Assembly (NCBI GenBank): GCA_002269645.1
Contig: NIVC01003383.1
Span: 36,522 to 100,317 of the forward strand
Length of the DNA: 63,796 nucleotides
Origin: Macrostomum lignano
Lineage: Eukaryota
Direction: 5' to 3'
Shown here: positions 2,810 through 31,649 of the stretch, piece after piece
Layout of the letters: each line of letters opens with the position of its first letter
Position numbering within the stretch: the stretch's first letter is position 1
Program-made: the position numbers and the translations under genes
Notes under the pieces: model-generated
Databases searched by the model: none
The model's input: only the letters and a program-made list of their open reading frames with translations
Told to the model about the DNA's origin: nothing

Positions 2810-3278
2810 GGCAGTGCTTATTCCCACAGTACCGTAGGAATAATTTCTGTCTTATTCCAACGGTACTGTGGGAATAATTTTCTGCTTATCCACACAGCAC
2901 ACTGACATGATAGCTGCCATATCTTCTACATATATATGCTGTATGTGAATAGTTTATAGCTTTTTGAAAGGGAATTTGAATTAAGGATACTAAGAAGCTG
3001 TTGATCTAGATCAATACCACAACCAACATTTTTTTGCATAAAAAAGCCATTAAATCTTTACTTCTATTAAACAAATTGTCAAGCAAAGTTATATTGTTAG
3101 GCCTATTATTAGTACTTAAACTGTAAGTACTAAACTAAAGTATTCCCACAGCATATATGTAGAAGATGGGCCAGCTATCTTGTCAGTATGCCATGCGGAT
3201 AAGCAGAAAATTATTCCCACAGTACCGTTGGAATAAGATAGAAATTATTCTTACGGTACCGTGAAGATAAGCACTGCC
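2810..3278. mobile_element. Non-autonomous Mutator-like (MULE) MITE, 469 bp
   Basis: ~135-bp terminal inverted repeats (GGCAGTGCTTA...TAAGCACTGCC). A perfect 9-bp target-site duplication TAATAATTT lies at 2801-2809 and 3279-3287. Long TIRs with GG ends plus a 9-bp TSD are typical of Mutator. Confidence 0.85.
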
Positions 3279-3389
3279 TAATAATTTAGTATAGACCTTT
3301 TTTTAAAAAAATTGCAAATAAGCATTGGCAACCCACACTTTGGATTATGCAATATAGGGATCAGCAGACTTCTTACCTTAGGGGCTAAA

Positions 3390-13900: not shown

Positions 13901-16900
13901 CCTGCCCAAGCTGAAGGCCACCAAGCACCGGGTGCTCATCTTCTGCCAGATGACCGCCCTCATGACCATCATGCAGGACTACTTTGATCACAAGGGATTC
14001 AAGTACCTGCGGCTTGATGGCACCACCAAGGCTGAGGACAGGGGCTCTCTGCTGCAGGTGATTGCCTCCTAGTCTCGTGTCTCTGATCCCTAGTCTCGTG
14101 TCTCTGATCCCTAGTCTCGTGTCTCTGATCCCTAGTCTCGTGTCTCTGATCCCTAGTCTCTTGTCTCTGATCCCTAGTCTCGTGTCTCTGATCCCTAGTC
14201 TCGTGTCTCTGATCCCTAGTCTCGTGTCTCTGATCCCTAGTCTCTTGTCTCTGATCCCTAGTCTCTTGTCTCTGATCCCTAGTCTCGTGTCTCTGATCTC
14301 TAGTCTCGTGTCTCTGATCCCTAGTCTCGTGTCTCTGATCCCTAGTCTCGTGTCTCTGATCCCTAGTCTCTTGTCTCTGATCCCTAGTCTCGTGTCTCTG
14401 ATCCCTAGTCTCTTGTCTCTGATCTCTAGTCTCGTGTCTCTGATCCCTAGTCTCTTGTCTCTGATCCCTAGTCTCTTGTCTCTGATCCCTAGTCTCTTGT
14501 CTCTGATCTCTAGTCTCGTGTCTCTGATCCCTAGTCTCGTGTCTCTGATCCCTAGTCTCGTGTCTCTGATCTCTAGTCTCGTGTCTCTGATCCCTAGTCT
14601 CGTGTCTCTGATCCCTAGTCTCGTGTCTCTGATCCCTAGTCTCTTGTCTCTGATCCCTAGTCTCTTGTCTCTGATCCCTAGTCTCTTGTCTCTGATCTCT
14701 AGTCTCGTGTCTCTGATCTCTAGTCTCGTGTCTCTGATCCCTAGTCTCTTGTCTCTGATCTCTAGTCTCGTGTCTCTGATCTCTAGTCTCGTGTCTCTGA
14801 TCCCTAGTCTCGTGTCTCTGATCCCTAGTCTCGTGTCTCTGATCCCTAGTCTCTTGTCTCTGATCTCTAGTCTCGTGTCTCTGATCCCAAATCTCTGGAC
14901 TTCTGTCTTCTGCTAAGCTTTGATCCGAATCGCAGTTTTCATGGCTAATAACAGTGGTTTGAAGTAGAATTCTCTGTCTTCAAAATCGAACTTGAAGCTT
15001 TGATGAAAAAATAAAATTCTTTATTCTCAAAAAATTCGTTTTTTGGGCCCTTCTCGTCCTGCGACTCGCCTGACACCCATGAAAGCGGCGACTCGATTCA
15101 CCGAGAAGGCACAACAGTTGGAAACTCGCTTTATTTGTTTTCAACCGGCGAATTCACCCCAGCAAGCCAGAGCTGACATTGCATCTGTGGCTGGCATTGC
15201 TGATTTCTGGGTGGCCTGCTGGACAGATCTCTTGGGATTTGGGTTTTGTTCCCGAATTTCTAAACTTTGATCCCGAATTTATGTAATTTGATCCCGAATT
15301 CGAGATTTGATCCCGAATTCATGGGATTTGATCCCGAATTAATGAGATTCGATTCCGAATTTATTGATTTTGATCCCAAATCTCTATGTTTCAATCTCAG
15401 ATCCCAAATCTCTATGTTTCAATCTCAGATCCCAAATCTCTATGTTTCAATCTCAGATCCCAAATCTCTATGTTTCAATCTCAGATCCCAAATCTCTATG
15501 TTTCAATCTCAGATCCCAAATCTCTATGTTTCAATCTCAGATCCCAAATCTCTATGTTTCAATCTCAGATCCCAAATCTCTATGTTTCAATCTCAGATCC
15601 CAGATTTCATAACTTATTCTACAATCTTACCTTGCAATTTTAATTTGACGCCAGGTTTTCAACGACACGGAGTCTGACTACTTCATCTTCCTGCTGAGCA
15701 CCCGGGCCGGCGGCCTCGGCCTCAACTTGCAGACGGCTGACACTGTGATCATCTTCGACTCGGACTGGAACCCGCACCAGGACCTGCAGGCGCAGGACCG
15801 GGCCCACCGCATCGGGCAGAAAAACGAAGTGCGCGTTCTGCGCCTTATCTGCGTGAACTCCGTTGAGGAGCGAATCCTGGCCGCTGCCAGGTACAAGCTC
15901 AACGTTGATGAGAAGGTCATCCAGGCTGGTGAGTTGGGTTGGGGAGAGCAGGCCTGAGCACAGCAGACGGAGGGGCTGATTGGAGGGCTGGGTATTGAGT
16001 AGGATTGGAGGGCTGGGTATTGAGTAGGATTGGAGGGCTGGGTATTGAGTAGGATTGGAGGGATGGGTATTGAGTAGGATTGGAGGGCTGGGTATTGAGT
16101 AGGATTGGAGGGCTGGGTATTGAGTAGGATTGGAGGGATGGGTATTGAGTAGGATTGGAGGGCTGGGTATTGAGTAGGATTGGAGGGCTGGGTATTGAGT
16201 AGGATTGGAGGGCTGGGTATTGAGTAGGATTGGAGGGCTGGGTATTGAGTAGGATTGGAGGGATGGGTATTGAGTAGGATTGGAGGGATGGGTATTGAGT
16301 AGGATTGGAGGGATGGGTATTGAGTAGGATTGGAGGGCTGGGTATTGAGTAGGATTGGAGGGCTGGGTATTGAGTAGGATTGGAGGGATGGGTATTGAGT
16401 AGGATTGGAGGGATGGGTATTGAGTAGGATTGGAGGGATAGGTATTGAGTAGGATTGGAGGGATAGGTATTGAGTAGGATTGGAGGGCTGGGTATTGAGT
16501 AGGATTGGAGGGCTGGGTATTGAGTAGGATTGGAGGGATGGGTATTGAGTAGGATTGGAGGGATAGGTATTGAGTAGGATTGGAGGGCTGGGTATTGAGT
16601 AGGATTAGAGGGCTGGGTATTGAGTAGGATTGGAGGGCTGGGTATTGAGTAGGATTGGAGGGCTGGGTATTGAGTAGGATTGGAGGGCTGGGTATTGAGT
16701 AGGATTGGAGGGCTGGGTATTGAGTAGGATTGGAGGGATGGGTATTGAGTAGGATTAGAGGGCTGGGTATTAAGTAGGATTGGAGGGCTGGGTATTGAGT
16801 AGGATTGGAGGGCTGGGTATTGAGTAGGATTGGAGGGATGGGTATTGAGTAGGATTGGAGGGATGGGTATTGAGTAGGATTGGAGGGATAGGTATTGAGT

Positions 16901-19900
16901 AGGATTGGAGGGCTGGGTATTGAGTAGGATTGGAGGGCTGGGTATTGAGTAGGATTGGAGGGCTGGGTATTGAGTAGGATTGGAGGGATGGGTATTGAGT
17001 AGGATTGGAGGGCTGGGTATTGAGTAGGATTGGAGGGCTGGGTATTGAGTAGGATTGGAGGGATGGGTATTGAGTAGGATTGGAGGGCTGGGTATTGAGT
17101 AGGATTGGAGGGATGGGTATTGAGTAGGATTGGAGGGCTGGGTATTAAGTAGGATTGGAGGGATGGGTATTGAGTAGGATTGGAGGGCTGGGTATTGAGT
17201 AGGATTGGAGGGCTGGGTATTAAGTAGGATTGGAGGGCTGGGTATTGAGTAGGATTGGAGGGCTGGGTATTGAGTAGGATTGGAGGGATGGGTATTGAGT
17301 AGGATTGGAGGGATGGGTATTGAGTAGGATTGGAGGGCTGGGTATTGAGTAGGATTGGAGGGATGGGTATTGAGTAGGATTGGAGGGATGGGTATTGAGT
17401 AGGATTGGAGGGATGGGTATTGAGTAGGATTGGAGGGATGGGTATTGAGTAGGATTGGAGGGCTGGGTATTGAGTAGGATTGGAGGGCTGGGTATTGAGT
17501 AGGATTGGAGGGCTGGGTATTGAGTAGGATTGGAGGGCTGGGTATTGAGTAGGATTGGAGGGCTGGGTATCGAGTAGAGTTAAAGGGCTGGGTATTGAGT
17601 AGGGTTGGAGGGCTGGGACTGAGTAGGGTTGCAGGGCAGGCCTGAGTCAATCCTCATCCCAAATCCGTCAGGCATGTTCGACCAGAAGTCAACTGGAGTG
17701 GAGCGGAAGCAGTTCCTCATGGCGCTGCTCGAAGGCGAGAACGACGGCGAACTGGAGGGCCTGGAGATTCACGACGACGAGACGGTGAACCAGATGCTCG
17801 CCCGCACCGAGCAGGAGTACGAAATCTACCAGGCTATGGACAAAGAGCGGCAGCACAACGATGCCATGAACAAAGACCGAAAACCGCGACTCATTACTAA
17901 TGAGGAGCTGCCGCCCTGGATTGTGCGCGACGATGTTCAAGTGAGCGACGGCCTTCCTCTGTTCGGTTTTTTAGGGATCTGAGGGTTCTTTGAGGGATCT
18001 GATTTATCATTTAGGGATCTGAGTTCTTTTAGAGATCTGAAGGATCTTTTAGGAAGTATCTCTGGGATTTTTTTAACTTTTTGGCCTCTCTGAATTTTTC
18101 TGGATTTGGCGCCCTGGAAGATTTCGGATACTGAATAATTCTGTGGAAATCTTTTAGCTCTTAGTAATCAGTTTTTAGGATTAGCTAGCGGGAGCACAAT
18201 TAGCTGACTTAGCTCATCTCACTGCCAACCCTGCCACCCCCAGGTGGACTCGAGCCTATTCGAGACGGACGAATCCGAGCTGGGATTCGGCGGCAAGCGC
18301 CAGCGCAAGGAGGTGGACTACACCGACTCCATCACTGACCAGCAGTTCCTGCGCGCCATCGAGGAGGGTGCGGACGACGACGAGGACGGCTACTATGACG
18401 ACGATGAGCCGGGCCCCTCCAGCCGCGGTGGCGGCGCCTCCGGCCGGAAGCGCGGCGGCGGCAGCGGCGGCGGCGCCAAGCGGAAGAAGCGCGAGTCAAC
18501 CGACCCGGAGGAGCCGCAGTCCAAGAAGCGCCGCGGCCGGCCGCCGCAGTCGTCCATAACGCCGAATCCGCCTCGGTTGACTCGGCTGATGAACCGCCTG
18601 CTGGACATCATCCTGACCTACCGGGACAGCGACGGCCGGGTGCTCAGCGAGCCCTTCGTCAAGCTGCCCAGCCGCAAGGAGCTGCCGGATTACTACGAGG
18701 TGATCCGCAAGCCCATGGATTTCGCCAAGATCCGGACGAAAATCCGCGAGCACCGCTACCGCGCCGTGGACGACCTCGTGTCCGACGTGCAGCTGCTGTG
18801 CCGCAACGCACAGATGTACAACAAAGATGGCAGCCTCATCTTCGAGGACAGTTTAGTCCTCGCCCAGGTGTGCTCAAGCGCCAGGGAGCAGCTCAAGCAC
18901 GAGGAGATTGAGGCGATGCGCCCGGCCCCGCCCAGCCTCGCTGCCCCGCCACCATCTGTTGCCGCAGCTGCCGCCAGCACCGCTGCCTCGGCCTCTGCAT
19001 CTGCCGTCTCGCTCGCCGCGTCTGCTTCGGCTTCGGCCCTCTCTGCTGGGCCGGATGACGATGGTAAGTGATCGCTTTGATTACCTTTGCTAATCTCATT
19101 AATTCATCTCACTCATCAATACCATTATGGAAGCCTATTTTTTCACGTCTATTGTTCTTATATCACGGTTTAAGATCTTCTATTCCCAATCTCCCTGGTT
19201 CCGGAATCCCCTGTTCCCCATCCCCTGTTTTCCTGTTCCCCATCCCCTGTTTTCCTGTTCCCCAATCCCCTGTTTTCCTGTTCCCCAATCCCCTGTTCCC
19301 CATCCCATGTTTTCCTGTCCCCAATCCCCTGTTTCCCATCCCCTGTTTTCCTGTTCCCCAATCCCCTGTTCCCCATCCCCTGTTTCCCTGTTCCCAATCC
19401 CCTGTTCCCCATCCCCTGTTTCCCTGTTTCCCATCCCCTGTTTTCCTGTTCCCCAATCCCCTGTTCCCCATCCCCTGTTTCCCTGTTTCCCATCCCCTGT
19501 TTTCCTGTTCCCCAATCCCCTGTTCCCCTGTTTCCCATCCCCTGTTCCCCATCCCCTGTTTTCCTGTTCCCAATCCCCTGTTCCCCAATCCCCTGTTCCC
19601 CTGTTTCCCATCCCTGTTCCCCATCCCCTGTTTTCCTGTTCCCCAATCCCCTGTTCCCCATCCCCTGTTTTCCTGTTCCCCAATCCCCTGTTCCCCATCC
19701 CCTGTTTTCCTGTTCCCCAATCCCCTGTTCCCCATCCCTGTTTTCCTGTTCCCCAATCCCCTGTTTTCCTGTTCCCCAATCCCCTGTTCCCCATCCCATG
19801 TTTTCCTGTCCCCAATCCCCTGTTTCCCATCCCCTGTTTTCCTGTTCCCCAATCCCCTGTTCCCCATCCCCTGTTTCCCTGTTCCCCAATCCCCTGTTCC

Positions 19901-20941
19901 CCATCCCCTGTTTCCCTGTTTCCCATCCCCTGTTTTCCTGTTCCCCAATCCCCTGTTCCCCATCCCCTGTTTCCCTGTTTCCCATCCCCTGTTTTCCTGT
20001 TCCCCAATCCCCTGTTCCCCTGTTTCCCATCCCCTGTTCCCCATCCCCTGTTTTCCTGTTCCCCAATCCCCTGTTCCCCAATCCCCTGTTCCCCTGTTTC
20101 CCATCCCCTGTTCCCCATCCCCTGTTTTCCTGTTCCCCAATCCCCTGTTCCCCATCCCCTGTTTTCCTGTTCCCCAATCCCCTGTTCCCCAATCCCCTGT
20201 TCCCCTGTTTCCCATCCCCTGTTTCCAATCTTCTGTTCCTCAATTCCCTGTTCCATATCCCTTGTTGCCAGTGGGCGGAGCAGTTCAGCGGTAAACGCGC
20301 CTGGCATTCATTTGGGTCTTGTGCACGAAAATTAGCCGGGGGTTGTTGTGCGATTCACATGCCTGATGATTATGGAGTCAGGGCCGCTGTGCACCCTCTG
20401 TGAGCGTGTGTACGAGTGCGTGACTGCGGACAGTATTGGCGCCCTTGTGTGTGGCTCAGGAGTCCGCGGAATGGCCATAATTGCCTCAGCGCTGGTTGTG
20501 GGGCCGTGTCGCCGAAGGCATTGCGTGCCCCACAGGCCTCCTGTGAATATGTACTTTTGTACACCAAGTCCCTATGGCACAGACTTTGCAATCTCTCAAT
20601 CTACAATTGTATTAAAGCTACTCAAAGCTACTTAAAGTAGTCTAAGTCTGGTTTTTTGCGCCAGTGTTATTCCGGGACCTCATAGGATTTTTGGCATAGT
20701 AAAAAATGATTATCATGCTATTAGCATCGATTGCGCCACGAAAAAACCCTAAGTACAACGCATTGCTTGCTCATTACCAATTGCAGTTAGCAATGCGTCA
20801 AGCGGCAAGGTGGGCGCCAGCGGCAGCGGCGGCGCCAGCAGCGGCGGCGGCGCCACCATCACTAAGAGGCGAATGAAGAAGACAGCAACTAGGAAGAAGT
20901 TCACCATCTCGGACGACGAGGATGGTGAAGATTTCTACTGA
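5799..20941 (+). CDS. SMARCA4: Brahma / SMARCA2-SMARCA4 SWI/SNF ATPase, 8 coding exons
   Basis: Exons 5799-9362, 9794-10294, 11000-11229, 13725-14057, 15655-15928, 17672-17940, 18244-19063, 20787-20941, all GT-AG and phase-compatible. Domains in order: Q/P-rich N-terminus, QLQ ([16 protein letters not shown]), HSA, BRK, Walker A DEMGLG|KT, DEGH box, helicase-C ([26 protein letters not shown]), SnAC, AT-hook (KRRGRP), bromodomain. A one-base frameshift at 7490-7494 is probably an assembly error. Confidence 0.97.
9398..9750. repeat. Intron 1 minisatellite, 32-bp unit (ATATCTTGTGCCTAGATTTTTCTAATCCGCTC)
   Basis: About 10 tandem copies. Confidence 0.92.
9794..10294 (+). CDS. SMARCA4: Brahma exon 2 (SNF2_N)
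   Basis: CAG|GC AAG ACC ATC ... [12 protein letters not shown] ... [22 protein letters not shown] ... G|GTGAGT. Confidence 0.96.
10383..10967. repeat. Intron 2 (TGAT)n microsatellite with interruptions
   Basis: Direct inspection. Confidence 0.95.
11000..11229 (+). CDS. SMARCA4: Brahma exon 3
   Basis: [35 protein letters not shown]...KDKK with canonical splice sites. Confidence 0.95.
11570..13575. repeat. Intron 3 minisatellite, 23-bp unit (ATCCCTAATCCTGAGATTTTCTT)
   Basis: About 2 kb array with recurring variant units. Confidence 0.95.
13725..14057 (+). CDS. SMARCA4: Brahma exon 4
   Basis: [22 protein letters not shown]...[14 protein letters not shown]...RLDGTTK. Confidence 0.95.
14070..14890. 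repeat. Intron 4 minisatellite A, 21-bp unit (CTAGTCTCGTGTCTCTGATCC)
   Basis: About 39 copies. They produce the spurious LIPSLVS ORF. Confidence 0.95.
15265..15602. repeat. Intron 4 minisatellite B: short TTTGATCCCGAA repeats followed by a 28-bp unit (TCTATGTTTCAATCTCAGATCCCAAATC)
   Basis: About 8 near-perfect 28-mers at 15375-15602. Confidence 0.9.
15655..15928 (+). CDS. SMARCA4: Brahma exon 5 (helicase C motifs V/VI)
   Basis: [55 protein letters not shown]. Confidence 0.96.
15978..17630. repeat. Intron 5 G-rich minisatellite, 25-bp unit (GGATTGGAGGGCTGGGTATTGAGTA)
   Basis: About 65 copies with ct/at variants. Confidence 0.96.
17672..17940 (+). CDS. SMARCA4: Brahma exon 6 (SnAC region)
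   Basis: GMFDQKST...[11 protein letters not shown]...[11 protein letters not shown]. Confidence 0.93.
18244..19063 (+). CDS. SMARCA4: Brahma exon 7 (AT-hook, bromodomain)
   Basis: [40 protein letters not shown]...NAQMYN. Confidence 0.95.
19205..20260. repeat. Intron 7 pyrimidine-rich minisatellite (CCCCTGTTTTCCTGTTCCCCAAT and sub-units)
   Basis: The array is almost devoid of purines on the + strand. Confidence 0.93.
20272..20555 (+). mobile_element. Degenerate tRNA-derived SINE copy (family shared with 28300-28400 and 43141-43505)
   Basis: A-box-like head GGGCGGAGCAGTTCAGCGGT. The body (CATGCCTGATGAT..AGGGCCGCTGT..GTGAGCGTGTG..GCTCAGG..GCGGAATGG) aligns by eye with 43305-43480. Confidence 0.6.
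20787..20941 (+). CDS. SMARCA4: Brahma terminal exon 8 (G/S-rich, basic, acidic end ...[11 protein letters not shown])
   Basis: TTGCAG acceptor; phase 1 matches the exon 7 donor. Open to TGA at 20939-20941. AATAAA at 21638-21643. Confidence 0.75.
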
Positions 20942-21804
20942 TTCAGGGCCGATTGGTCACCCGGAATTGCTGCTTTTACATTATTAACGCATTCTTAACA
21001 CGTTGCAGTTATTTAACTTATAGCTATTGCACACGCTCCCCCCAGCTATTCTATCCAATTTGTACATGTTTTACTCTCTGTACTATTAGTAGTGTGTCTG
21101 TACGCGTGCTCAGTGTGTGTCGCTTTATTTACAAATGATAATGCCCCCCCCCGGTTAGTGTTGACCCATCTGTATCCCAGTTATAACTGATTAATTCTGC
21201 AAAAGGTGTAACAAATGCTTCAATTGTTTGCGATATAGTACCCATAACTGATTGCTTTATGATACTACTCTTCAAAAGTAGTAATATATATAGAGTGCGC
21301 GCTGCAGCTCAGCCAATGTGGTGCGTTTTTTGTTGCGTCTTGATTGTCATTAATTATTACTACTGCATTAGCTTACTGTTAGTAGTAGTAAACACACATT
21401 CACTGCTTTGTAAGTTACGCTATGTTACGCCCTGGGACTTTTTTCTCTCTCTCAAGTTGACGGCTCTCAGTTTCTGTTCGTTGCAGAATTTATAAATAGT
21501 CAATATGGATATCCACTTGTGACTGTCTTTATTCCCATTGCTGTTGCATCAATTATAGTAATAATCATATTTCCCGTGTTAGCCTGGACGTTGCGAATTT
21601 TAGTTAACTTTATATAAAAATTCTGTTTAATAATTTTAATAAACTAGTGGCTGAGTTCACGGCTCGCTTTTCCAGTTTTTGTCCCTGACTGTTAAAGTGC
21701 ACTGGGCCGACCGCTTTGGCCAGCACTGCTTATTATCCAAATATGAGCACTGCTCAATCACACTTGTTTAATGCAATCTTTTTTATTGATCTATTGATCT
21801 CAGT

Positions 21805-22245
21805 TGTTCTGTGGGTGCTCAGCCTGCAGTCTCTCAGTCATTCTGTGGGTGCTCAGCCTGCAGTCTCTCAGTCATTCTGTGGGTGCTCAGCCTGCTGTCT
21901 CTCAGTCATTCAGTGGGTGCTCAGCCTGCAGTCTCTCAGTCATTCTGTGGGTGCTCAGCCTGCAGTCTCTCAGTCATTCTGTGGGTGCTCAGCCTGCAGT
22001 CTCTCAGTCATTCAGTGGGTGCTCAGCCTGCTGTCTCTCAGTCATTCTGTGGGTGCTCAGCCTGCTGTCTCTCAGTCATTCTGTGGGTGCTCAGCCTGCA
22101 GTCTCTCAGTCATTCAGTGGGTGCTCAGCCTGCTGTCTCTCAGTCATTCAGTGGATGCTCAGCCAGCCCCTCAGTCATTCATTGGGTGCTCAGACTGCGG
22201 TCTCTCAGTCATTCATTGGGTGCTCAACCAGCCCCTCAGTCCTTC
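21805..22245. repeat. Minisatellite, 34-bp unit (TCTGTGGGTGCTCAGCCTGCAGTCTCTCAGTCAT)
   Basis: About 13 copies. Confidence 0.93.
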
Positions 22246-22349
22246 AGCTGATATAATGATGTTGAATGACAACATAATTCATCGTGTGGAAGGTCCGTCC
22301 GCCTGATGAATGAGAAATCGGTTTGCTGCGCTTTAGGTTATAGAAACCT

Positions 22350-22522
22350 CTGTCACACGCAGGAAATCAGTACTGTGACAGTACTACTGTCACACACAAA
22401 AAATCCGTACAGTCACACAGGAAATCAGTACTGTCACACGCAGGAAATCAGTTATGTCACACGCAGGAAATCAGTACTGTCACACGCAGGAAATCAGTAC
22501 TGTCACACGCAGGCAATCAGTA
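22350..22522. repeat. Minisatellite, ~23-bp unit (TGTCACACGCAGGAAATCAGTAC)
   Basis: About 7 degenerate copies. Confidence 0.8.
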
Positions 22523-23139
22523 CGCTCGTACTTTACAATCGTAAAGCTCGCAACGCACTTCGACAGCGATTTTTAGGAGATCTACTCCTGACGTCATCTG
22601 GTCAGATGGTGGAACAGTTCACTTTTGAGTCATTTAAGGCGCCCCTGAAGAGATAGAAAGTCGAGCACGGAGCCTCGTCACCAACGTTGCTCAGCAACGT
22701 TGAGCAACGTCTGGGCAGCATCTGCAGTAAAAGAAATTAAGAAACTGCTGCGAGGATCATGCAACTCAGACAGACACCCTTGACTGGGACAAGGTCTGTC
22801 AGGGAAATCCTCATCTGTAATACGCCATGTGATGACGGTCGATCTACAGCACAGATTCTTTTTAGCCATCCCATACGAGATTTACTGCCAGCTAGACTAC
22901 AGTCGAGCGTTCGCAAGAGAATGGCAAAGGGCAGCCTGGTGGAAGAGAAGGCCAACAAAGCAAGAGAGCACGTTGCAATATACCAATACTGATGCAGCCC
23001 ATCCATATTTCACCATGACTACGTGGCTATCGGGCGAGCTGATATTCGATTATTGCCATAGACGATTTCATTTTAGCCCGAAACGTCCGGCCGATAATTT
23101 ACCAATACCATAGACCTTGAGGGCAGAAAGATCTTTCTA

Positions 23140-23968
23140 TAGATAGGGCACTTTGTATGGCGGTAATAGGGAAAGCGCGACCGCTGTTTTTCGTCATTTA
23201 TGCGAAAAGAGCCGACATGGGTTGCTTCAATTTTGACTTCAGTAGCTTAGGGACATAGACGCTATTTTTTGAGAATTGAATAAAACTTCTGAATTAATTA
23301 AACAGCTACTCAATTGAACCAAGAATGATGAATTCACATGAATTCACTGCAGAGACTACTAACGAAATTGAGTTCAGTAGTTGATTTACGCGCTGTCGCG
23401 AGATGCAATTTTTTTTACATTAGCTTCTATGGCCACATTAGCGGTTAATGAGTGGCCCGTCTTGTGTACGACGTATTTATGATCTTTGGTCTAACAGCGC
23501 TGCAGCTTGTACACCCATCAGTCTGGATGATGCCACACTACTGTTAAAATAAAAACCAACATCAATGCAATAACATCTTTCAGTAGACAACATTGGTTCC
23601 TATTGCTCATTTGTGTATTTATGTCATTACAATCTGCTCAGCAACAAGAGAAACAGGCTGTGTTGTGCTCACTGATTGCACAGGTCATAGTCGCAGACTA
23701 CAGTCTCAGTGTACCTCAGCAGGTACTCCGAGTGACGGGCACACTGATGCAGTGCTGCACAGAGTCTCCAGCAAAAATTGGCAGCTCCGAGTGCTCCTGC
23801 AGCAGCTCCGCGCTCGCCTCGCTCAAGACGCCTTTGAAGCAGCGCCGGCCGTGCCGGGTGTCCCCGCAGGGCGTCACGCGCTCCTCCGCGGCGCCAGCGT
23901 ACCGCGCATAGCAACTGATCTCGGAGGCCTCAGCAGTGAGTACTGTGCAGCCCAGAAACACCAGACAG
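23140..23968 (-). repeat. Left arm of ~830-bp inverted duplication (partner 25660-26498)
   Basis: Reverse complement of the right arm with only scattered substitutions and small indels. Confidence 0.95.
23669..23968 (-). pseudogene. 5'-truncated inverted copy of the Ly6-like gene
   Basis: Lacks the first ~13 codons (ATG and start of the signal peptide) and the splice acceptor. Has a one-C deletion at 23728-23729. Confidence 0.8.
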
Positions 23969-24659
23969 CACGTAAGTTTTTCGTGCTATATTGTTTAATT
24001 ATTAGTTTACTATATAAAAATACCATCCATCATAACGTACTAACTGGTTAATAAGTATTTCGTGTTCTTTAGTTGTCTATAGTTTACTCAATGTTTGTGC
24101 TAAAATATATTCAGTTGTTGTCTATGGCAAAAACGCGCTGCTTCTTTTACACTGAAAGGATTGAAGATTTCTTTCACATTCCTGCCCGGCAAATTGGATA
24201 GGAATATACAATTAGTGTTATAGTTAGCACGCGAGAAACAGCGTTTCACGGCCCGCTGAGTCTGTCTATGGTAAAATCCCATTTACTCCAATGCATTCAA
24301 TCGGTTTCACGGCCCGCTGAAAATGTCTATGGCAAAGTCAGAAGAAAGCGGGGTCAAGGGGCGCTAAGCCAAGGAATTCTAAATCTAGCAATTTTAGATT
24401 TATAATTCCTTGGCTAAGCACTCTAGAGAAAGAAGAAAATCTAAGAAATTGTCTATGGCCAAAACTCCTTATTTTGTGAATCGAAAATAGTAACTGACAG
24501 TAATCAATATCAAGCTGCAGTACTAAGCTTTATTTTCGAAATATACAAGTTGTAAAAACATTAACTAGATACTTATATGCATGAGAGTTATTTATTTATT
24601 AAAGTCGGCCATAGATAATTGCAGCGGGCGAGCGCAGCGTTTCACCCCGTTTCAACACG

Positions 24660-24934
24660 CCCAGGCTAACTATAACCTTTGAAACTGCAAGTTGTATTGC
24701 GCGGCGCATCTGAAGGCTGCGTACGGCTGTTCAGTCCAAGGACTGGGGGGTCGCCACACACACCCTCAATTACCCCAGCTAATGCTGGCACCCATTTTAC
24801 AGCTGGGTGAACTGAAGCAAAGCAGAGGTAAAGAGTCTTGCTCAAGGACACAAATTGTTTCGAGTGGATCGAGAATCGAACCCCCAACCTTTCAGCTGTG
24901 AGTCCGACGCTCTGACCACTGGGCTACAACCCCT
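24660..24934 (-). mobile_element. tRNA-derived SINE with MIR-like CORE domain
   Basis: Minus strand: GGGGTTGTAGCCCAGTGGTCAGAGCGTCGG (A box) ... GGTTCGATTCTC (B box), then GTGTCCTTGAGCAAGACTCTTTACCTCTGCTTTGCTTCAGTTCACCCAGCTGTAAAATGGG, which is colinear with the CORE consensus as recalled. Confidence 0.8.
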
Positions 24935-25621
24935 AGTTTTAGTAGATCGTACATGGTCATGTCTGTGCCACACTTCAGCCATGCCTTCCAGCTATGGCCC
25001 AATTCGGTCGCAGTTAAAACCAAATTGATTTCTGTTGTCTATGGCTTTCTGTGGTTTGTCTGAAATCTCTACCCCGGCTTAAAAAATGCGATTGTACTTG
25101 TGCTCTGCTAGATAGATAGTAGAAGTTTAAGTTCTGCGTCCTGAGTGTTTTTCTTAGTCCTTGTTGCTTATACTCCTAGTTAAATCACCCTAGTTCTTCA
25201 AGGTTAGCAGCAAGTCAGGTGAGTCTTGTTTATTACTGAAGAATTGTTTCATTTAATGAGCGCCAGCTAAACTGCGGTCTGTAACGCGCAAAGTTTTTTT
25301 AGTGTTTATAAAAGTTATTTTGGTTACAAATAGCCTCAGAAATAGTAGGAATGAACCATGTAGAAGTATAGCTGTGTTATAGTGCCTTTAGTTCAAACAT
25401 TCAGTTCAACTGGGAGGCGATCTTTTTCTCATTCCTAGCTTAGATACTTGAATATTCACTGTTTGACTAGGAATTTAGGTAAGAATTGGCTTTGCATTTT
25501 TTAAGCGGGGCAATTTAAATGAAAAAATAATCAGAGAATTTAAAGTGACTTCTCTGAACGAAGACAACAAATTAGTAAACATTTTCACTGCTTGATCCGC
25601 GCGTTTTCCTGACTCTGCAGC

Positions 25622-25960
25622 ATGGCGATGAGACAGTTAGCCTTTCTACTAGGAGCAGCCTGTCTGGTGTTTCTGGGCTGCACAGTACTCACTGCTGAGG
25701 CCTCCGAGATCAGTTGCTATGCGCGGTACGCTGGCGCCGCGGAGGAGCGCGTGACGCCCTGCGGGGACACCCGGCACGGCCGGCGCTGCTTCAAAGGCGT
25801 CTTGAGCGAGGCGAGCGCGGAGCTGCTGCAGGAGCACTCGGAGCTGCCAATTTTTGCTGGAGACTCTGTGCAGCACTGCATCAGTGTGCCCGTCACTCGG
25901 GAGTACCTGTTGAGGTACACTGAGACTGTAGTCTGCGACTATGACCTGTGCAATCAGTGA
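25622..25960 (+). CDS. Small secreted Ly6/uPAR (three-finger)-like protein, 112 aa
   Basis: Hydrophobic signal peptide ending AEA|SEISCY, 6 Cys in the mature part, and C-terminal CDYDLCN typical of LU domains. 5'UTR intron 25219-25620 (CAG|GTGAGT ... CTGCAG|C ATG). Confidence 0.75.
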   Translation: MAMRQLAFLLGAACLVFLGCTVLTAEASEISCYARYAGAAEERVTPCGDTRHGRRCFKGVLSEASAELLQEHSELPIFAGDSVQHCISVPVTREYLLRYTETVVCDYDLCNQ

Positions 25961-26498
25961 GCACAACACAGCCTGTTTCTCTTGTTGCTGAGCAGATTGT
26001 AATGACATAAATACACAAATGAGCAATAGGAACCAATGTTGTCTACTGAAAGATGTTATTGCATTGCGTTGATGTTGGTTTTTATTTTAACAGTTGTGTG
26101 GTATCATCCAGACTGACGGGTGTACAAGCAGCAACGCTGTTAGACCAAAGATCATAAATACGTCGTACACAAGACGGGCCACTCATTAACCGCTAATGTG
26201 GCCATAGAAGCTAATGTAAAAAAATTGCATCTCGTAAGACTACAGCGCGTAAATCAACTACTGAACTCAATTTCGTTAGTAGTCTCTGCAGTGAATTCAT
26301 GTGAATTCATCATTCTTAGTTCAATTGAGTAGCTGTTTGATTAATTCAGAAGTTTTATTCAATTCTCAAAAAATAGCGTCTATGTCCCTAAGCTACTGAA
26401 CTCAAAATTGAAGCAACCAATGTCGGCTCTTTTCGCATAAATGACAAAAAACAGCGGTCGCGCTTTCCCTATTACCGCCATACAAAGTGCCCTATCTA
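25660..26498 (+). repeat. Right arm of inverted duplication
   Basis: Contains most of the Ly6-like CDS plus ~540 bp downstream. Confidence 0.95.
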
Positions 26499-26869
26499 GG
26501 GAATATAAGATCTATGTGTTAGGCTACACACTGCCATGGAGCCCCGTTAGGTTGTGGTGTTTTTGCCATAGACAGGTTTTGCTGACGCAAATGCAGGGTT
26601 GAAGATTATTCCAACTCTCCTAGTGGTTAGTGGAGGAATGCGCTGGATGGGAGGTTTCTGCCATAGACAGTTGTTTTTCCACACTCTCTTATGGGGTAAC
26701 TGTGTCTTCAACTTCAAGTAGTGTAGGAAGCCATATAAATTTTATCCTAACTAATAGACAATTTTTGTGGAGTGCGAAATCGTGAAGTCAATGGGGGATT
26801 ATCCATTTGGCATGGAGTTTAAAGTATAGGCGTTTGGATAGGAGTTGTGAGCTGCTGCAAATGCGTCCC

Positions 26870-27330
26870 GGGGTGAAAGATTTCGGGGTGAGAGATTTCG
26901 GGGTGGGAGATTTCGGGGTGAGAGATTTCGGGGTGGGAGATTTCGGGGTGGGAGATTTCGGGGTGAGAGATTTCGGCGTGAGAGATTTCGGGAGTTAGAG
27001 ATTTCGGGGTGAGAGATTTCGGGGTGGGAGATTTCGGGGTGAGAGATTTCGGGAGTGAGAGATTGCAAGGGGAGAGAGATTTCGGGGTGAGAGATTTCGG
27101 CGTGAGAGATTTCGGGAGTTAGAGATTTCGGGGTGAGAGATTTCGGAGTGAGAGATTTCGGGGTGGGAGATTTCGGGGTGAGAGATTTCGGGGTGAGAGA
27201 TTTCGGGAGTGAGAGATTGCAAGGGGAGAGAGATTTCGGGGTGAGAGATTTCGGGAGTGAGAGATTTCGAGAGTGAGAGATTTCGGGGAGGGAGATTTTG
27301 GGGATATGAGATTTCGAGGATGGGATATTT
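26870..27330. repeat. Minisatellite, 15-bp unit (GAGATTTCGGGGTGA)
   Basis: About 28 copies. Confidence 0.92.
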
Positions 27331-27425
27331 CAGAGATGCTAAGGGTAGCTCATATCCAGTCAGCTGGACACCGAGCTCAGCACTGCGGGTCCTCGGCTGC
27401 CGCGTAACTCAGGCTGGTCGGCAAC

Positions 27426-28262
27426 TCAGGCGCAGGCGGACGCTGGGCCCAGCAGCCGGATGTCCACCCGCCCGTCCGGCTGCTCGTTGCCGCCCGTCGC
27501 GCCCTGGACGCTGGTGGCCTCGCTGGCCGCGAAACTGCCTCCCCCGCCGCCGCCGGCCGCGCCGCCGGCCGCGCCGCCGCCGCTGGCACCGCCGCCCGAG
27601 TAGCCGCCGCCGCCGCCGCCCCCGCCAGGGCTGCTGGTCTTCTTGCCGCCGCCGCCGCCGCCGCCGAAGCCTCCTCGTCCAGCCTGGCCAGTGGAGGAGC
27701 CGCCGCTCCACCCACCGGCCCGGGAGGCGCCGCCTTCGCCGCTGGTGCCGCCGCCGTGCGCCCCGCCGCCCGTCAGCCAGCCGGCACCGCCGCCGCCCTT
27801 GCCGCCGCAGCAGGTGCTGGAAGCAGCCGGAGCGCCGCCACCAGCCACGCCGCCGCTGCCCTGGTGGCTGTCCGGCACCGCCGACGGCGTACCGTCCGGC
27901 CCGACGATTCCCGGCGATCCCGCCGACGTCTCCGCGGCGCCGCCACCGCCGCCAGCCGCTAGCAGCAGCGAAGCGGTCGCAGTCTCGTACACGAAGCTGC
28001 CGCCACCGCCGCCAGCTCCGAAGCGGCTGTCGCCGGAGTCACCACCGACCTGCCCGACGACCACCGTCAACTCGGCGTCTCCAAGTACAAAACTGGCTGA
28101 TTTGAAGGCGCCCCTGCCGCCGGCGTTCGAGCCTGAATTGGAGCCGCCGGCGGCGCCCCAGGCGCGGAGTCGGTAGCAGGCGTTGGGCAGAGGCGGCGAG
28201 TAGCTCTGGGGGGCCGGGCCGCTCGCCGCTGCATTGAAAGGCGGGTTGGAAAATAAATCCAT
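27426..28262 (-). CDS. Stand-alone glycine-rich protein of ALK/LTK Gly-rich domain type, 278 aa
   Basis: From ATG 28262: YRLRAWGAAGG...GGRGA...LTVVVGQVGG...GGGGGSFV...LLLAAGGGGG...GGFGGGGGGG...GGGGGYSGG...GGGGGSF...GNEQPDGRVDI. This matches the motif order of the ALK/LTK and bacterial glycine-rich domains. Uninterrupted. An upstream exon cannot be excluded. Confidence 0.8.
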   Translation of the reverse strand: MDLFSNPPFNAAASGPAPQSYSPPLPNACYRLRAWGAAGGSNSGSNAGGRGAFKSASFVLGDAELTVVVGQVGGDSGDSRFGAGGGGGSFVYETATASLLLAAGGGGGAAETSAGSPGIVGPDGTPSAVPDSHQGSGGVAGGGAPAASSTCCGGKGGGGAGWLTGGGAHGGGTSGEGGASRAGGWSGGSSTGQAGRGGFGGGGGGGKKTSSPGGGGGGGGYSGGGASGGGAAGGAAGGGGGGSFAASEATSVQGATGGNEQPDGRVDIRLLGPASACA

Positions 28263-28806
28263 GATGGCGGGAGGGCTGCGGGTCACCTTGGAGTAGCGCC
28301 AGCGCTGAGTCAATTGCGCCCATTGCGCTGAATCCTGCGCATATTTAAGCGCGTGAATACTGTACGCAGACACGCTCTCATACACACGCTCACACCTTCC
28401 AAATCGTGGGGAAGTGCGTAGGTGTTCTGTTCGAGGTGGCAATCAAAAGTTTGAGCGAAAAACTGACAATCTCCCATATTCTCACACTGGAGACTCAGTG
28501 CGCCCATCAATCAAATTTGACCACGCAAGGGACTTTGGTGCAAGGTTGAGTAGATATCATGGTACTCTGCCAATGTACTCCCGCAGTGCTCACAATAGTT
28601 TGAGTAGAGCGTCTTCTCAGACAGCCAGCTGCTGCAGTTCCCGCCATCCTGCATCAGCCAGAGCTGGCGCAGGTCTTTAGCGGTGCCCATCACGCAGACG
28701 GCGGCTTCGCTGACGAACTCAGCAACTACACAGTGGGCGTCGATAGTGCAGAAGAGGACACATTTGAGCGCACTGCTCGCTGGCCTGTGCAATGTTGAGA
28801 CATCAG

Positions 28807-29880
28807 GAACTGCTTAGAGATCAGTGCGGAACTGCTTAGAGATCAGTGCGGAACTGCTTAGAGATCAGTGCGGAACTGCTTAGAGATCAGTGCGGAACTG
28901 CTTAGATAGATCAGTGCGGAACTGCTTAGAGATCAGTGCGGAACTGCTTAGAGATCAGTGCGGAACTGCTTAGAGATCAGTGCGGAACTGCTTAGAGATC
29001 AGTGCGGAACTGCTTAGAGATCAGTGCGGAACTGCTTAGAGATCAGTGCGGAACTGCTTAGAGATCAGTGCGGAACTGCTTAGAGATCAGTGCGGAACTG
29101 CTTAGATAGATCAGTGCGGAACTGCTTAGAGATCAGTGCGGAACTGCTTAGAGATCAGTGCGGAACTGCTTAGAGATCAGTGCGGAACTGCTTAGAGATC
29201 AGTGCGGAACTGCTTAGAGATCAGTGCGGAACTGCTTAGAGATCAGTGCGGAACTGCTTAGAGATCAGTGCGGAACTGCTTAGAGATCAGTGCGGAACTG
29301 CTTAGAGATCAGTGCGGAACTGCTTAGAGATCAGTGCGGAACTGCTTAGAGATCAGTGCGGAACTGCTTAGAGATCAGTGCGGAACTGCTTAGATAGATC
29401 AGTGCGGAACTGCTTAGAGATCAGTGCGGAACTGCTTAGAGATCAGTGCGGAACTGCTTAGAGATCAGTGCGGAACTGCTTAGAGATCAGTGCGGAACTG
29501 CTTAGAGATCAGTGCGGAACTGCTTAGAGATCAGTGCGGAACTGCTTAGAGATCAGTGCGGAACTGCTTAGAGATCAGTGCGGAACTGCTTAGAGATCAG
29601 TGCGGAACTGCTTAGATAGATCAGTGCGGAACTGCTTAGAGATCAGTGCGGAACTGCTTAGAGATCAGTGCGGAACTGCTTAGAGATCAGTGTGGAACTG
29701 CTTAGAGATCAGTGCGGAACTGCTTAGAGATCAGTGCGGAACTGCTTAGAGATCAGTGCGGAACTGCTTAGAGATCAGTGCGGAACTGCTTAGAGATCAG
29801 TGTGGAACTGCTTAGAGATCAGTGCGGAACTGCTTAGAGATCAGTGCGGAACTGCTTAGAGATCAGTGCGGAACTGCTCT
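28807..29880. repeat. Minisatellite, 22-bp unit (GAACTGCTTAGAGATCAGTGCG)
   Basis: About 48 near-identical copies; four carry a TA insertion. Confidence 0.97.
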
Positions 29881-30504
29881 GAAGAACTATACTAAAAATG
29901 CCATAAAAGACTCAATACGATAGATATCAAATCAGAGGTTCCAGCACACCCCTACTAGCCAACTCTAGTCACCTGACCATGAGACCTGGCGCGGACACAT
30001 TTGAGCAGCACAGGTTGCGGTGCGGCAGCAGACGGTCACAGCTCGGCTGAACAGATGCGGCAGTCAGCAAGGGCAGCAGCAGCAGCAGCAGCACTTGTGC
30101 CAGAAGTTCCATCTTTGAATGCTTGGTTTGCTACAGCACAGCAACAGAAGACGTCAAAAGTAGAGAAGTTTTTAGCAAAAGATGAGGCAGTCCATCGCTG
30201 CAGAGTTTCTATAGCTGGGAATTTGTTTGAATGCAACCAATTGGCTCGGTCTGGAGCCGCAAATGACAGAGCTTTCTACTGGAAATTGTACACTAACCCG
30301 TTGCTAGGGGATCAAATTTGCGGGACAATCGATATGCTGCCATTTGAAATGCTGTACTCGTAGAATGTGAAGATGACGCAATACTTCCACTTAAAATTCG
30401 GCAACTCCCTCTTCTTCTTAAGGATATTTTTGGCGATGTGCTTTCTTTTGCAAGTTAAATTTATATTAATAAGGTTTTTTTTACTATTGCTATTATTAAT
30501 ATTA

Positions 30505-30806
30505 GTATTGGTTTTGTCAGCCTAACTGAGAATAAAGCCATCCAATGTGAGAATCCTGCCTACGCTGACTGCGAAGGGCCTGGCTGCGTGCAGCCTTAGT
30601 CTATGGGCCATAGACTATAAAGGACAAGCAAAGTGATAAAAAGCCATCCAATGTGAGAATCGATTGGTCTTTTAAAACTTTGCTTGTCCTTTATAGTCTA
30701 TGGCTCATAGACTAAGGCTGGACGCAGCCAGGCCCTTCGCAGTCAGCGTAGGCAGGATTCTCACATTGGATGGCTTTATTCTCAGTTAGGCTGACAAAAC
30801 CAATAC
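30505..30806. repeat. Near-perfect 302-bp palindrome (130-bp arms, ~42-bp spacer), possible foldback element
   Basis: Arms 30505-30634 and 30677-30806 are reverse complements with about 2 mismatches. Confidence 0.9.
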
Positions 30807-31649
30807 ATGCTCACACCTAGGTTTTTAGAACTTTATAATTTATGACTTTATTCCAGGCCAACATACTAACTAACGAACTGTCTGATGAATTATGCTTATG
30901 TCTGTGTTCTTGAGTCATTTAGGTAAAATGCTTTGTCCTCTGCAGTAAGCTTTTTGAAATTCGAAACTTTATCCGACATTTCCTGCTCAAATACCATGAG
31001 GAGCACTATAAAAAGTTCCAACTGCACTTAATCAAGAAGTGAACGTACTTCACTTTCAAACCCCACATATGGCACTTTTGGTAGGTCCTGTTCTCGTAAG
31101 GGATTTTTGGTCTCGCAGTCCTTATTGTTTCGCCGTGCTAATCTAAACTGCGACAGGGTGCGATTTAAATCTGGATTGGAAGCCATTCGAAGCTGTAGTA
31201 AAAATGAGTTAACTTTGCCGAGTTCTTTGCTCTTGTCTCCAGTTTTGGGTATCCGAACTTGCCAATCCGTAAGTTGTCTGTGGTGAAACCCAATTTGGTG
31301 CTACAACAATCAGCGTAGAAAGCACAGAGAGTACTTTTGCTGTGTTTCTTCGTACTTGTACCAACTTTCCACCAGAGACAGAGCACTTTACACGCATTTA
31401 GTTTAGCAACACTTCATCCTCCAGTAAGGTCGAGACATCGGCCTTTAGGGAAGAATTCAATGTAGAATTACATAAAGTCTAGAGAACACGACTTCCGTAA
31501 TTGGCAACCCATATTAGTTTTTTAGGCAGAATTTACAATGGTTTAAAACAGACAAAGGCATTGTTGGTTGCATGTTCTGGAATGAAAAACTGATTTAAAT
31601 AAAAAAATTTTAGTTGATTGCAGCAATGCTACTAGTGGCATGCATGGCC

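What the first reader, a model, noticed from the sequence alone, without database searches (positions are those of the whole stretch)
23140..26498. Inverted gene duplication configured like an intron-spliced hairpin RNA
Seen: ~830-bp near-identical inverted arms (23140-23968 and 25660-26498) cover the Ly6-like CDS. Three bases past the end of the left arm lies a consensus donor CAC|GTAAGT (23972), and the gene's own acceptor is at 25620. Splicing 23972-25620 would leave an ~830-bp dsRNA stem with a ~42-nt loop. Brahma ends about 1.5 kb upstream on the same strand and could supply read-through. Known: inverted gene duplications give hpRNA-derived endo-siRNAs in Drosophila and plants. Inferred: a natural cis-silencing device for a secreted protein. 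Caveats: an AATAAA at 23548-23553 could stop read-through, and the duplication may be transcriptionally silent.
Basis: partly seen in the sequence, partly recalled or inferred. Interest (0 to 1): 0.7.

Follow-up and report, generated by a model that had tools for sequence, protein, structure and literature searches.

The report
Inverted duplicate of a small flatworm gene
A small secreted-protein gene of the flatworm Macrostomum lignano was copied head-to-head next to itself and one copy is now decaying; this is ordinary gene-duplicate turnover, and the layout that looked like a built-in self-silencing hairpin comes from a later 183-base deletion.

Summary
Arms 23135-23968 and 25660-26503 align over about 850 nt at 96-97% identity. 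GTAAGT lies 3 nt past the left arm, and a CTGCAG acceptor lies 1 nt before the gene's ATG. The window is Macrostomum lignano (Mlig_3_7 assembly). Two further near-identical copies of the locus on other contigs carry the same inverted duplication, so it is not a chimeric-read artefact.

In the third locus (L003) the left copy is a complete 112-aa gene on the minus strand, with its own ATG and acceptor, and GTAAGT lies 186 nt beyond it. The window and L002 share a 183-nt deletion that removed the left copy's start and placed the arm beside GTAAGT. The ancestral structure was therefore a head-to-head gene pair, and each locus has since lost one copy. The window's left arm is a truncated, frameshifted pseudogene.

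The acceptor matches the species' spliced-leader trans-splice motif, and trans-splicing there would separate the arms. Two AATAAA signals lie on the + strand inside the left arm. The only support for + strand read-through is indirect: the gene's annotation ID suggests it was cut from a long transcriptional unit. A hairpin RNA would be very stable if made, but no transcript or small-RNA data could be reached. The "Ly6-like" label is unsupported; the gene is an orphan.

The parts
25622..25960 (+). Intact single-exon CDS (112 aa plus stop) of an orphan small protein with an apparent signal peptide; the functional copy in this locus
   Evidence: ORF and translation. The identical protein is encoded at locus L002. 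The only homologue in two very large protein searches is its own paralogue.
25615..25620 (+). Acceptor CTGCAG, 1 nt before the ATG; fits the M. lignano SL trans-splice acceptor motif [T/C]TNCAG
   Evidence: Sequence. Only YTNCAG in 25300-25700 and only strong acceptor downstream of 22247. Motif taken from PMC8629364.
25660..26503 (+). Right arm of the inverted duplication: codons 14-112 of the gene plus 543 nt after the stop codon
23135..23968 (-). Left arm: minus-strand pseudo-copy. It lacks the ATG and the first 13 codons and has a 1-nt deletion (GGG to GG) that shifts the frame after residue 93.
   Evidence: The orthologous left copy in L003 is complete and intact.
23968..23969 (.). Junction of a 183-nt deletion, shared with L002 and absent from L003. 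It removed the inner 44 nt of the left copy (the reverse complement of tgcag plus the ATG and first codons) and 139 nt of unrelated sequence.
   Evidence: L003 7526-7708 is present between ...CCAGACAG and CACGTAAGT.
23972..23977 (+). GTAAGT consensus donor-like hexamer. It is pre-existing flanking sequence that the deletion brought next to the arm.
23969..25659 (.). Spacer of 1691 nt with no internal inverted homology. It holds six copies of the TCTATGG motif, a SINE-like stretch, and a candidate non-coding exon ending in CAG|GTGAGT at 25218/25219.
23279..23553 (+). Two AATAAA (23279, 23548) and one ATTAAA (23297) on the + strand inside the left arm; possible terminators of any read-through transcript
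20753..20941 (+). Last coding exon and stop codon of the upstream Brahma/SNF2 gene; likely poly(A) signal at 21638
   Evidence: Gene call with SNF2, HSA, BRK and SnAC Pfam domains; translation and stop; AATAAA.

Best explanation
This is a genuine DNA-level inverted (head-to-head) duplication in Macrostomum lignano. The duplicated segment is about 890 bp and carries the single coding exon and 3' region of a lineage-restricted small secreted-protein gene. The duplication predates the multiplication of this chromosome region in the neopolyploid DV1 line, because all three assembled copies of the locus share the same outer junction and the same arms. Originally both copies were complete, diverging from a ~1.9-kb spacer. 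Since then one copy has been disabled in each locus. In the window and L002, a 183-bp deletion removed the left copy's acceptor, ATG and first 13 codons. The window's left copy also carries a 1-nt frameshift. In L003 it is the right copy that is frameshifted. The arms have also exchanged variants, by gene conversion or double inversion. The 'intron-spliced hairpin' layout in the window is a by-product: the GTAAGT is older flanking sequence that the deletion placed 3 nt from the arm, and the acceptor is the surviving gene's own acceptor, probably an SL trans-splice site. Shown: the structure, the three-locus comparison, the deletion, and the coding status of all six copies. Inferred: that there is no dedicated silencing function, and that the acceptor is a trans-splice site.
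For: Both arms are present in three contigs with identical outer junctions. The L003 left arm extends 44 nt further, through the reverse complement of the ATG and tgcag, and encodes an intact 112-aa ORF (A39V, Y95F) preceded by a pyrimidine tract and CAG. The L003 right copy is frameshifted to the 96-aa protein P0001. The 183-nt deletion is shared by the window and L002. The spacer has no inverted homology, so the duplicated segment is discrete. Arms within a locus differ by 11-15 substitutions in ~833 nt plus 3-4 indels, so this is not a fold-back read artefact. Variants are mosaic: wL is closest to 2R and 3R (5-6 substitutions against 11 to 2L), and the TAAGACT/CG indel is swapped in the window. 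The acceptor fits YTNCAG, and 30-39% of M. lignano genes are trans-spliced. The assembly is known to hold 180 Mb of duplicated blocks at 95% identity or more.
Against: No expression data could be examined, so a silencing role is not excluded. Exactly one intact copy survives per locus, and the CDS part of the arms varies less than the 3' part (5 of about 35 variable events in 301 of 845 columns). This could reflect constraint or conversion beyond simple decay. The right breakpoint of the deletion, 3 nt from a consensus donor, remains a coincidence; GTRAGT occurs about once per 1.2 kb on this strand. The gene ID prefix suggests a long + strand transcriptional unit. Single-base differences among the six arms, including the frameshift in a GGG run, may be affected by Pilon polishing with multi-mapping reads.
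Confidence: 0.7

Rival explanations
1. hpRNA-like source of endogenous siRNAs. Transcription on the + strand, by read-through from Brahma or from a long transcriptional unit, crosses the left arm, the spacer and the right arm. The RNA folds into a ~840-bp duplex, with or without splicing from 23972, 23936 or 25219 to 25620. A Dicer-2-type enzyme dices it, and the siRNAs lower the mRNA of the small gene in cis and of its copies at the other loci in trans.
For: The hairpin would be extremely stable and has a 241-bp perfect duplex over codons 14-93. Brahma is on the same strand with its likely poly(A) signal 1.5 kb upstream. 25620 is the only strong + strand acceptor after 22247, so any upstream donor would have to use it. 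The orthologous gene is named Mlig001822.g2. Prefixes are shared within clusters of transcriptional units and track length, and low prefixes include short trans-spliced genes cut from long units (RPS17 = Mlig002062.g2, 583 nt). This suggests the ~1-kb gene lies in a unit longer than 6 kb. M. lignano responds to long dsRNA by soaking and has Dcr-2 orthologues and four RdRPs. Young Drosophila hpRNAs are born as inverted repeats of an exon next to the parent gene.
Against: No transcript or small-RNA evidence was found. The published M. lignano small-RNA survey describes miRNAs and piRNAs, not hairpin siRNAs. AATAAA at 23279 and 23548 and ATTAAA at 23297 lie in the left arm on the + strand. SL trans-splicing at 25620 would sever the arms before or while the right arm is transcribed. 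The distance from the Brahma poly(A) signal to the acceptor is ~4 kb, or ~2.4 kb after subtracting repeats, which is above the 1-kb operon threshold. The splice-ready layout is specific to the deletion-bearing loci, and the left arm began as a normal gene copy. The long-unit inference could equally reflect downstream extension through tandem repeats.
Confidence: 0.17
2. Both copies matter as coding genes. The locus is a divergent paralogue pair driven from the shared spacer, and the conserved cluster of TGTCTATGGC motifs there could be its regulatory element. The window simply shows the state in which dosage has been reduced to one copy per locus across a polyploid genome.
For: An intact left copy with its own acceptor in L003. 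Exactly one intact ORF per locus. The motif cluster is conserved at the same positions in all three loci and is strongly over-represented, 7 matches against 0.56 expected.
Against: No expression evidence for the minus-strand copy, and it is not annotated in L003. One intact copy in each of three loci is also expected fairly often from random decay. The motif's function is unknown.
Confidence: 0.1
3. Assembly artefact: a chimeric fold-back PacBio read or a mis-join created the inversion.
For: The assembly is PacBio-based, highly repetitive and redundant.
Against: The same structure occurs in three contigs with locus-specific differences: a 183-nt deletion, a 635-nt MITE insertion, and private substitutions. 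The arms differ by 1.3-1.8% plus indels and are separated by a 1.7-kb unique spacer, unlike a fold-back artefact.
Confidence: 0.02

Closest known systems
Drosophila hairpin RNA (hpRNA) loci, e.g. Dsim-hp58, hp-Nmy, hp-CG4068 (PMC10317233, PMC10292708)
   Same: A long inverted repeat derived from an exon of a protein-coding gene, located next to the progenitor, evolutionarily young, and able to form several hundred bp of near-perfect dsRNA.
   Different: In Drosophila both arms lie in a demonstrated single primary transcript that yields Dcr-2-dependent 21-22-nt siRNAs, and the target is a separate gene. Here one arm is the still-functional gene itself, the other is (or was) a full gene copy on the opposite strand, and neither a primary transcript nor siRNAs are shown.
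Read-through-driven inverted gene duplications that silence in plants (Arabidopsis PAI1-PAI4, maize Mu killer, soybean CHS I locus, rice Lgc1; recalled from memory apart from the Teosinte Pollen Drive hairpin, PMC11390486)
   Same: An inverted duplicate of a gene, or part of one, placed so that a neighbouring promoter could transcribe through both arms.
   Different: In those cases the read-through transcript and the small RNAs or methylation were demonstrated. Here they are hypothetical, and the organism processes many pre-mRNAs by SL trans-splicing, which would cut between the arms.
Genomic palindromes with arm-to-arm gene conversion (e.g. primate X/Y ampliconic palindromes; from general knowledge)
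   Same: Inverted arms with a unique spacer, gene copies in the arms, high arm-to-arm identity, and mosaic variant patterns that indicate exchange between arms.
   Different: This one is much smaller (0.84-kb arms against 10 kb to 1 Mb), and one arm's gene copy is already disabled, so conversion is not preserving both copies.
Ordinary tandem or inverted gene duplicates undergoing differential loss after polyploidy
   Same: A duplicate pair with one copy pseudogenised and a different copy lost at different homeologous loci (wL and 2L against 3R).
   Different: None of substance; this is the category the evidence fits best.

Membership tests
hpRNA / endo-siRNA hairpin locus | Long inverted repeat able to form extended near-perfect dsRNA | tested here: met
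   ~840-nt arms at 96-97% identity; 241-bp perfect duplex; predicted MFE -1651 kcal/mol for the spliced form.
hpRNA / endo-siRNA hairpin locus | Both arms contained in one primary transcript from one strand | not testable with these tools
   No RNA-seq access, and no RNA-derived contigs on record. The only evidence is an indirect hint from the gene ID prefix.
hpRNA / endo-siRNA hairpin locus | Dicer-2-dependent 21-22-nt small RNAs from the arms, and a primary transcript that rises when Dicer-2 is lost (PMC10317233) | not testable with these tools
   The feature is defined. The M. lignano small-RNA paper reports miRNAs and piRNAs only.
hpRNA / endo-siRNA hairpin locus | Arms homologous and antisense to an expressed target gene | tested here: met
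   The + strand of the left arm is antisense to codons 14-112 and the 3' region of the adjacent intact gene.
Ly6/uPAR (LU, three-finger) domain proteins | Match to the UPAR_LY6 family profile or to any solved LU-domain protein | tested here: not met
   Pfam scan up to E=10 gives only a meaningless DUF3481 hit. No PDB sequence hit up to E=10. Exhaustive phmmer finds only the paralogue and spurious repeat-inflated hits.
Ly6/uPAR (LU, three-finger) domain proteins | 8-10 cysteines in the conserved pattern ending in CC-x4-CN | tested here: not met
   The mature part has 6 cysteines, and the C-terminus is VVC-DYDL-CN with a single C rather than CC. This is only a partial resemblance.
Ly6/uPAR (LU, three-finger) domain proteins | Three-finger beta fold | tested here: inconclusive
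   AlphaFold2 without an alignment gave mean pLDDT 45.9, and no homologues exist to build an alignment. The model is unusable, so no fold search was run.
SL trans-spliced gene / operon member in M. lignano | [quoted passage not shown] | tested here: met
   CTGCAG at 25615-25620, 1 nt before the ATG.
SL trans-spliced gene / operon member in M. lignano | Repeat-adjusted distance of 1 kb or less to the upstream same-strand gene (criterion of PMC8629364) | tested here: not met
   About 3.96 kb from the AATAAA at 21638 to 25620, and about 2.4 kb after subtracting the tandem arrays and the inverted copy.
SL trans-spliced gene / operon member in M. lignano | RNA-seq reads carrying the SL joined at the acceptor | not testable with these tools
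   No read-level data available.
Palindrome with arm-to-arm exchange | Variant patterns that group a left arm with right arms of other loci | tested here: met
   wL-2R 5 and wL-3R 6 substitutions against wL-2L 11. The 7-nt indel and the 1-nt deletion show swapped distributions. Caveat: short-read polishing could mix variants among near-identical copies.

The most novel reading that the evidence does not exclude
The locus is an hpRNA at birth. A + strand transcript reading through from Brahma, or a long transcriptional unit, folds the dead left copy onto the live right copy. The resulting siRNAs tune down this orphan secreted-protein gene at all three homeologous loci. This would be the first hairpin-derived endo-siRNA locus described in a flatworm. 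It would also be a case where one hairpin arm is still the functional target, with the 183-bp deletion having converted a paralogue into a dedicated antisense arm fused to a splice donor.
Probability: 0.12. Interest if true: 0.7.

Novelty: new member of a known kind. Interest (0 to 1): 0.3.

Why it matters
On the best-supported reading it matters little. It is a clean, well-resolved example of inverted gene duplication followed by loss of different copies at different loci of a neopolyploid genome, with exchange between the arms. It also shows that a splice-ready hairpin layout can arise as a by-product of a deletion. If the hairpin reading were true, it would extend hpRNA-type self-regulation from Drosophila and plants to flatworms and would capture the earliest stage of hpRNA birth. 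The test is cheap, because stranded RNA-seq, SL-read, poly(A)-site and small-RNA datasets for this species are already public.

Tried and rejected
1. Assembly artefact: rejected by three independent contigs with locus-specific differences.

2. Arms as the homogenised core of a larger, older palindrome: rejected, because the spacer has no inverted homology.

3. Arms as terminal inverted repeats of a transposon: no target-site duplication at the outer junctions, and the protein occurs only at these three loci.

4. The 139-nt L003-specific piece as an exon of a known gene or transposon: no Pfam hit and no homologue. Its open + frame ends at the GTAAGT and would join in frame to the small ORF, but that is compatible with chance.

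5. Structured or known RNA in 20500-31500: only sub-threshold Rfam noise. No tRNAs.

6. Direct transcript evidence through public contigs that encode the ORF, an M3-start variant, or the + strand junction ORF: none on record.

7. Looking up Mlig001822 or the Brahma gene ID in papers and supplements: not found.

8. Getting Brahma's annotation name by protein search: I wasted the last capped search with too strict an E-value cut-off.

9. Ly6 fold test: the model was too poor to use.
Full report
**1. The observation**

The inverted repeat is real. The repeat finder reports four collinear inverted blocks spanning 23135-23968 and 25660-26503 at 96-100% complementarity. A gapped alignment joins them into one ~850-nt match, with 828/860 identities and 16 gap columns. 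It is by far the largest of only three inverted repeats of 150 bp or more in the 63.8-kb window.

- The right arm covers codons 14-112 and 543 nt downstream of an intact 112-aa ORF at 25622-25960.
- GTAAGT sits at 23972-23977, 3 nt beyond the arm.
- CTGCAG ends at 25620, 1 nt before the ATG. It is the only strong + strand acceptor after 22247.
- Brahma's CDS stops at 20941, and the first AATAAA follows at 21638, about 1.5 kb before the arm.
823 of 837 left-arm bases pair across, the loop is 39 nt, and the inner duplex is perfect for 241 bp.

**2.

The left copy reads on the minus strand. It lacks the first 39 nt of the exon, so it has no ATG. It also has a 1-nt deletion (GGG to GG) that shifts the frame after residue 93. 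It is therefore a pseudo-copy.

On the + strand there are further consensus donors:
- 23936, inside the arm
- 24898
- 25219 (CAG|GTGAGT), 400 nt before the acceptor and a plausible end of a conventional non-coding first exon

There are also AATAAA signals at 23279 and 23548 and an ATTAAA at 23297, all inside the left arm.

**3. Organism and replicate loci**

The exact protein is encoded on two contigs of GCA_002269645.1. A 96-aa near-identical protein named BOX15_Mlig001822g2 [Macrostomum lignano] lies on a third contig. The literature confirms that this accession is the Mlig_3_7 assembly of the DV1 line: PacBio/Canu, Pilon-polished, with 180 Mb of duplicated blocks at 95% identity or more because of extra large chromosomes.

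- L001 is the window itself (15622-35960, 100% identical).
- L002 and L003 are about 97%-identical copies of the locus. L003 has an annotated Brahma gene call upstream, and L002 aligns to the window's Brahma 3' region.
- Both L002 and L003 carry both arms.
- The outer junction is identical in all three, and the inner junction is identical in the window and L002.

This removes the assembly-artefact explanation. It also dates the duplication to before the multiplication of this region.

**4. The key result**

In L003 the left arm runs 44 nt further, through the reverse complement of the first codons, the ATG and tgcag. After that come 139 nt of unrelated sequence, and only then the same GCGCAC|GTAAGTTTTTCGTGCTA.

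The window and L002 therefore share a 183-nt deletion. That deletion removed the left copy's 5' end and, incidentally, placed the arm 3 nt from a pre-existing GTAAGT.

The L003 left copy encodes a complete 112-aa protein (A39V, Y95F). It is preceded on the minus strand by ...cccgtcttcccgtctttctcttccatgcag|C ATG, a good acceptor. The L003 right copy carries the frameshift and a C20S change.

The ancestral structure was thus a head-to-head pair of complete coding exons diverging from a shared spacer. Each locus now has exactly one intact copy:

| Locus | Left copy | Right copy |
|---|---|---|
| Window | Truncated and frameshifted | Intact |
| L002 | Truncated | Intact |
| L003 | Intact | Frameshifted |

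The spacer shows no inverted homology, so the duplicated segment was a discrete ~890 bp, from 25616 to 26503 in right-copy coordinates. L003 additionally has a ~635-nt palindromic MITE with a TA duplication just after the GTAAGT region.

**5. Arm evolution**

Within a locus the arms differ by 11-15 substitutions in ~833 nt plus 3-4 indels.

Variant patterns are mosaic:
- The window's left arm is closest to the right arms of L002 and L003 (5-6 substitutions, against 11 to the L002 left arm).
- A 7-nt indel (TAAGACT/CG) and the 1-nt frameshift show swapped distributions.

This fits arm-to-arm gene conversion, or two successive inversions. One caveat: Pilon polishing with multi-mapping short reads could mix single-base variants among six near-identical copies. 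The large structural features are not affected by this caveat.

**6. Is there a hairpin transcript?**

This could not be tested directly. No RNA-derived contig encoding the ORF, an alternative-start version, or the junction-spanning + strand ORF is on record. No paper or held supplement mentions Mlig001822.

*Indirect evidence for read-through.* GenBank gene models of this assembly come from RNA-seq "transcriptional units" (TUs), which were cut into genes at SL trans-splice and poly(A) sites. Clusters of transcriptional units share a numeric prefix. In annotation strings from PMC5816591 the prefix number tracks length:
- 016440: 2590 nt
- 019751: 1978 nt
- 032562: 768 nt

Low prefixes, however, include short TRANSSPLICED genes cut out of long units, such as RPS17 (Mlig002062.g2, 583 nt) and AQR (Mlig001724.g2, 6421 nt). 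A ~1-kb gene with prefix 001822 therefore probably belongs to a unit longer than 6 kb, and Brahma is the only long same-strand neighbour. This is suggestive only, because the unit could extend downstream instead.

*Evidence against.*
- The acceptor fits the species' trans-splice motif [T/C]TNCAG, and 30-39% of genes are trans-spliced. Trans-splicing at 25620 would separate the arms.
- Three poly(A) signals lie in the left arm on the + strand.
- The repeat-adjusted distance from Brahma's poly(A) signal (~2.4 kb) exceeds the 1-kb operon criterion.
- The published small-RNA survey reports miRNAs and piRNAs only.

*Is the machinery present?* Yes. Soaking in long dsRNA gives RNAi, and Dcr-2 orthologues and four RdRPs are present.

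**7. The protein**

"Ly6-like" rests only on the C-terminal C-DYDL-CN motif.
- Pfam finds nothing.
- No PDB sequence matches.
- An exhaustive phmmer scan of 1.84 billion representatives finds only the paralogue and three spurious hits inflated by internal repeats.
- AlphaFold2 without an alignment gives mean pLDDT 46.

The protein has a plausible N-terminal signal peptide and six cysteines in the mature part. It is a lineage-restricted orphan.

**8. Verdict**

The structure is real and well resolved. The most economical explanation is ordinary inverted gene duplication, followed by loss of different copies in a neopolyploid genome. The splice-ready hairpin appearance of this particular locus was created by a deletion.

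An hpRNA-like function is not excluded (about 0.12-0.17). It would be interesting if true, and existing public RNA-seq, SL-read, poly(A) and small-RNA data can settle it cheaply.

Compared with known systems, the locus resembles a Drosophila hpRNA at birth, or the plant read-through inverted repeats (PAI1-PAI4, Mu killer). Of the features that define an hpRNA, only the inverted-repeat architecture and the antisense homology to an adjacent gene could be tested and are met. The defining transcript and small-RNA features remain untested.

Noticed in passing
window 23056-26669 (also L002 and L003 at matching positions): A short motif, consensus about YTGTCTATGGCAAAAAC, is tightly clustered around the locus. 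TGTCTATGG has 7 exact matches in the window against 0.56 expected, all within 24119-26669. Of 16 hits to the 7-nt core, 12 lie in 23056-26661: two left of the left arm, one in each arm, six in the spacer and two right of the right arm. The flanks of the copies are unrelated, so it is not a dispersed repeat. Its function is unknown; it may be a regulatory or protein-binding site cluster.
   Followed up: partly
window 30505-30806: A 302-nt perfect-centre palindrome, 93% self-complementary, that contains the same TCTATGG/CCATAGA motif as a palindromic pair. It is probably a MITE-like foldback element. It gives a weak, sub-threshold Rfam MIR169_8 hit, which is almost certainly spurious.
   Followed up: partly
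L003 7729-8363 (empty site in window at about 23988/23989): A ~635-nt palindromic MITE with long inverted arms and a TA target duplication, inserted only in the L003 copy of the locus, 17 nt after the GTAAGT. Its arms also contain AGTCTATGG.
   Followed up: partly
L003 7562-7711: In L003 the + strand has an ATG (the reverse complement of the CATG at the left copy's start) that opens a 50-codon frame running exactly to the GTAAGT. A splice to the 25620-type acceptor would join it in frame to the small ORF. No homologue or Pfam match was found, so it is probably chance.
   Followed up: partly
window 24740-24935, minus strand: A stretch that looks by eye like a tRNA-derived SINE head followed by a conserved core. 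ARAGORN calls no tRNA there.
   Followed up: no
window 15978-17637, 19185-20266, 21798-22226, 22385-22523, 26869-27316, 28806-29878: Numerous long tandem arrays with periods of about 25, 37, 34, 23, 15 and 22 nt, inside Brahma's introns and on both sides of the duplication. This is consistent with the reported 15% simple and tandem repeat content of this genome.
   Followed up: no
L003 11395-13314 minus strand (corresponds to about window 27000-28900): An annotated 373-aa minus-strand gene with no Pfam domain starts about 520 nt beyond the right arm and is convergent with the small gene. In the window this region is the 15-nt tandem array, which encodes repeat peptides. If it is really transcribed, it is a second possible source of read-through across the arms, on the minus strand.
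   Followed up: no
window 22530-23134 against 23968/23969: Relationships among the three loci are mosaic. The left flank is 100% identical to L003 but 96.4% to L002, while the 183-nt deletion is shared with L002 and not L003. This suggests recombination or conversion among the homeologous copies, or haplotype switching in the assembly.
   Followed up: partly
window 2802-2956 / 3136-3286: Another inverted repeat with 155-nt arms at 86% identity and a 180-nt spacer. Its nature is unknown.
   Followed up: no
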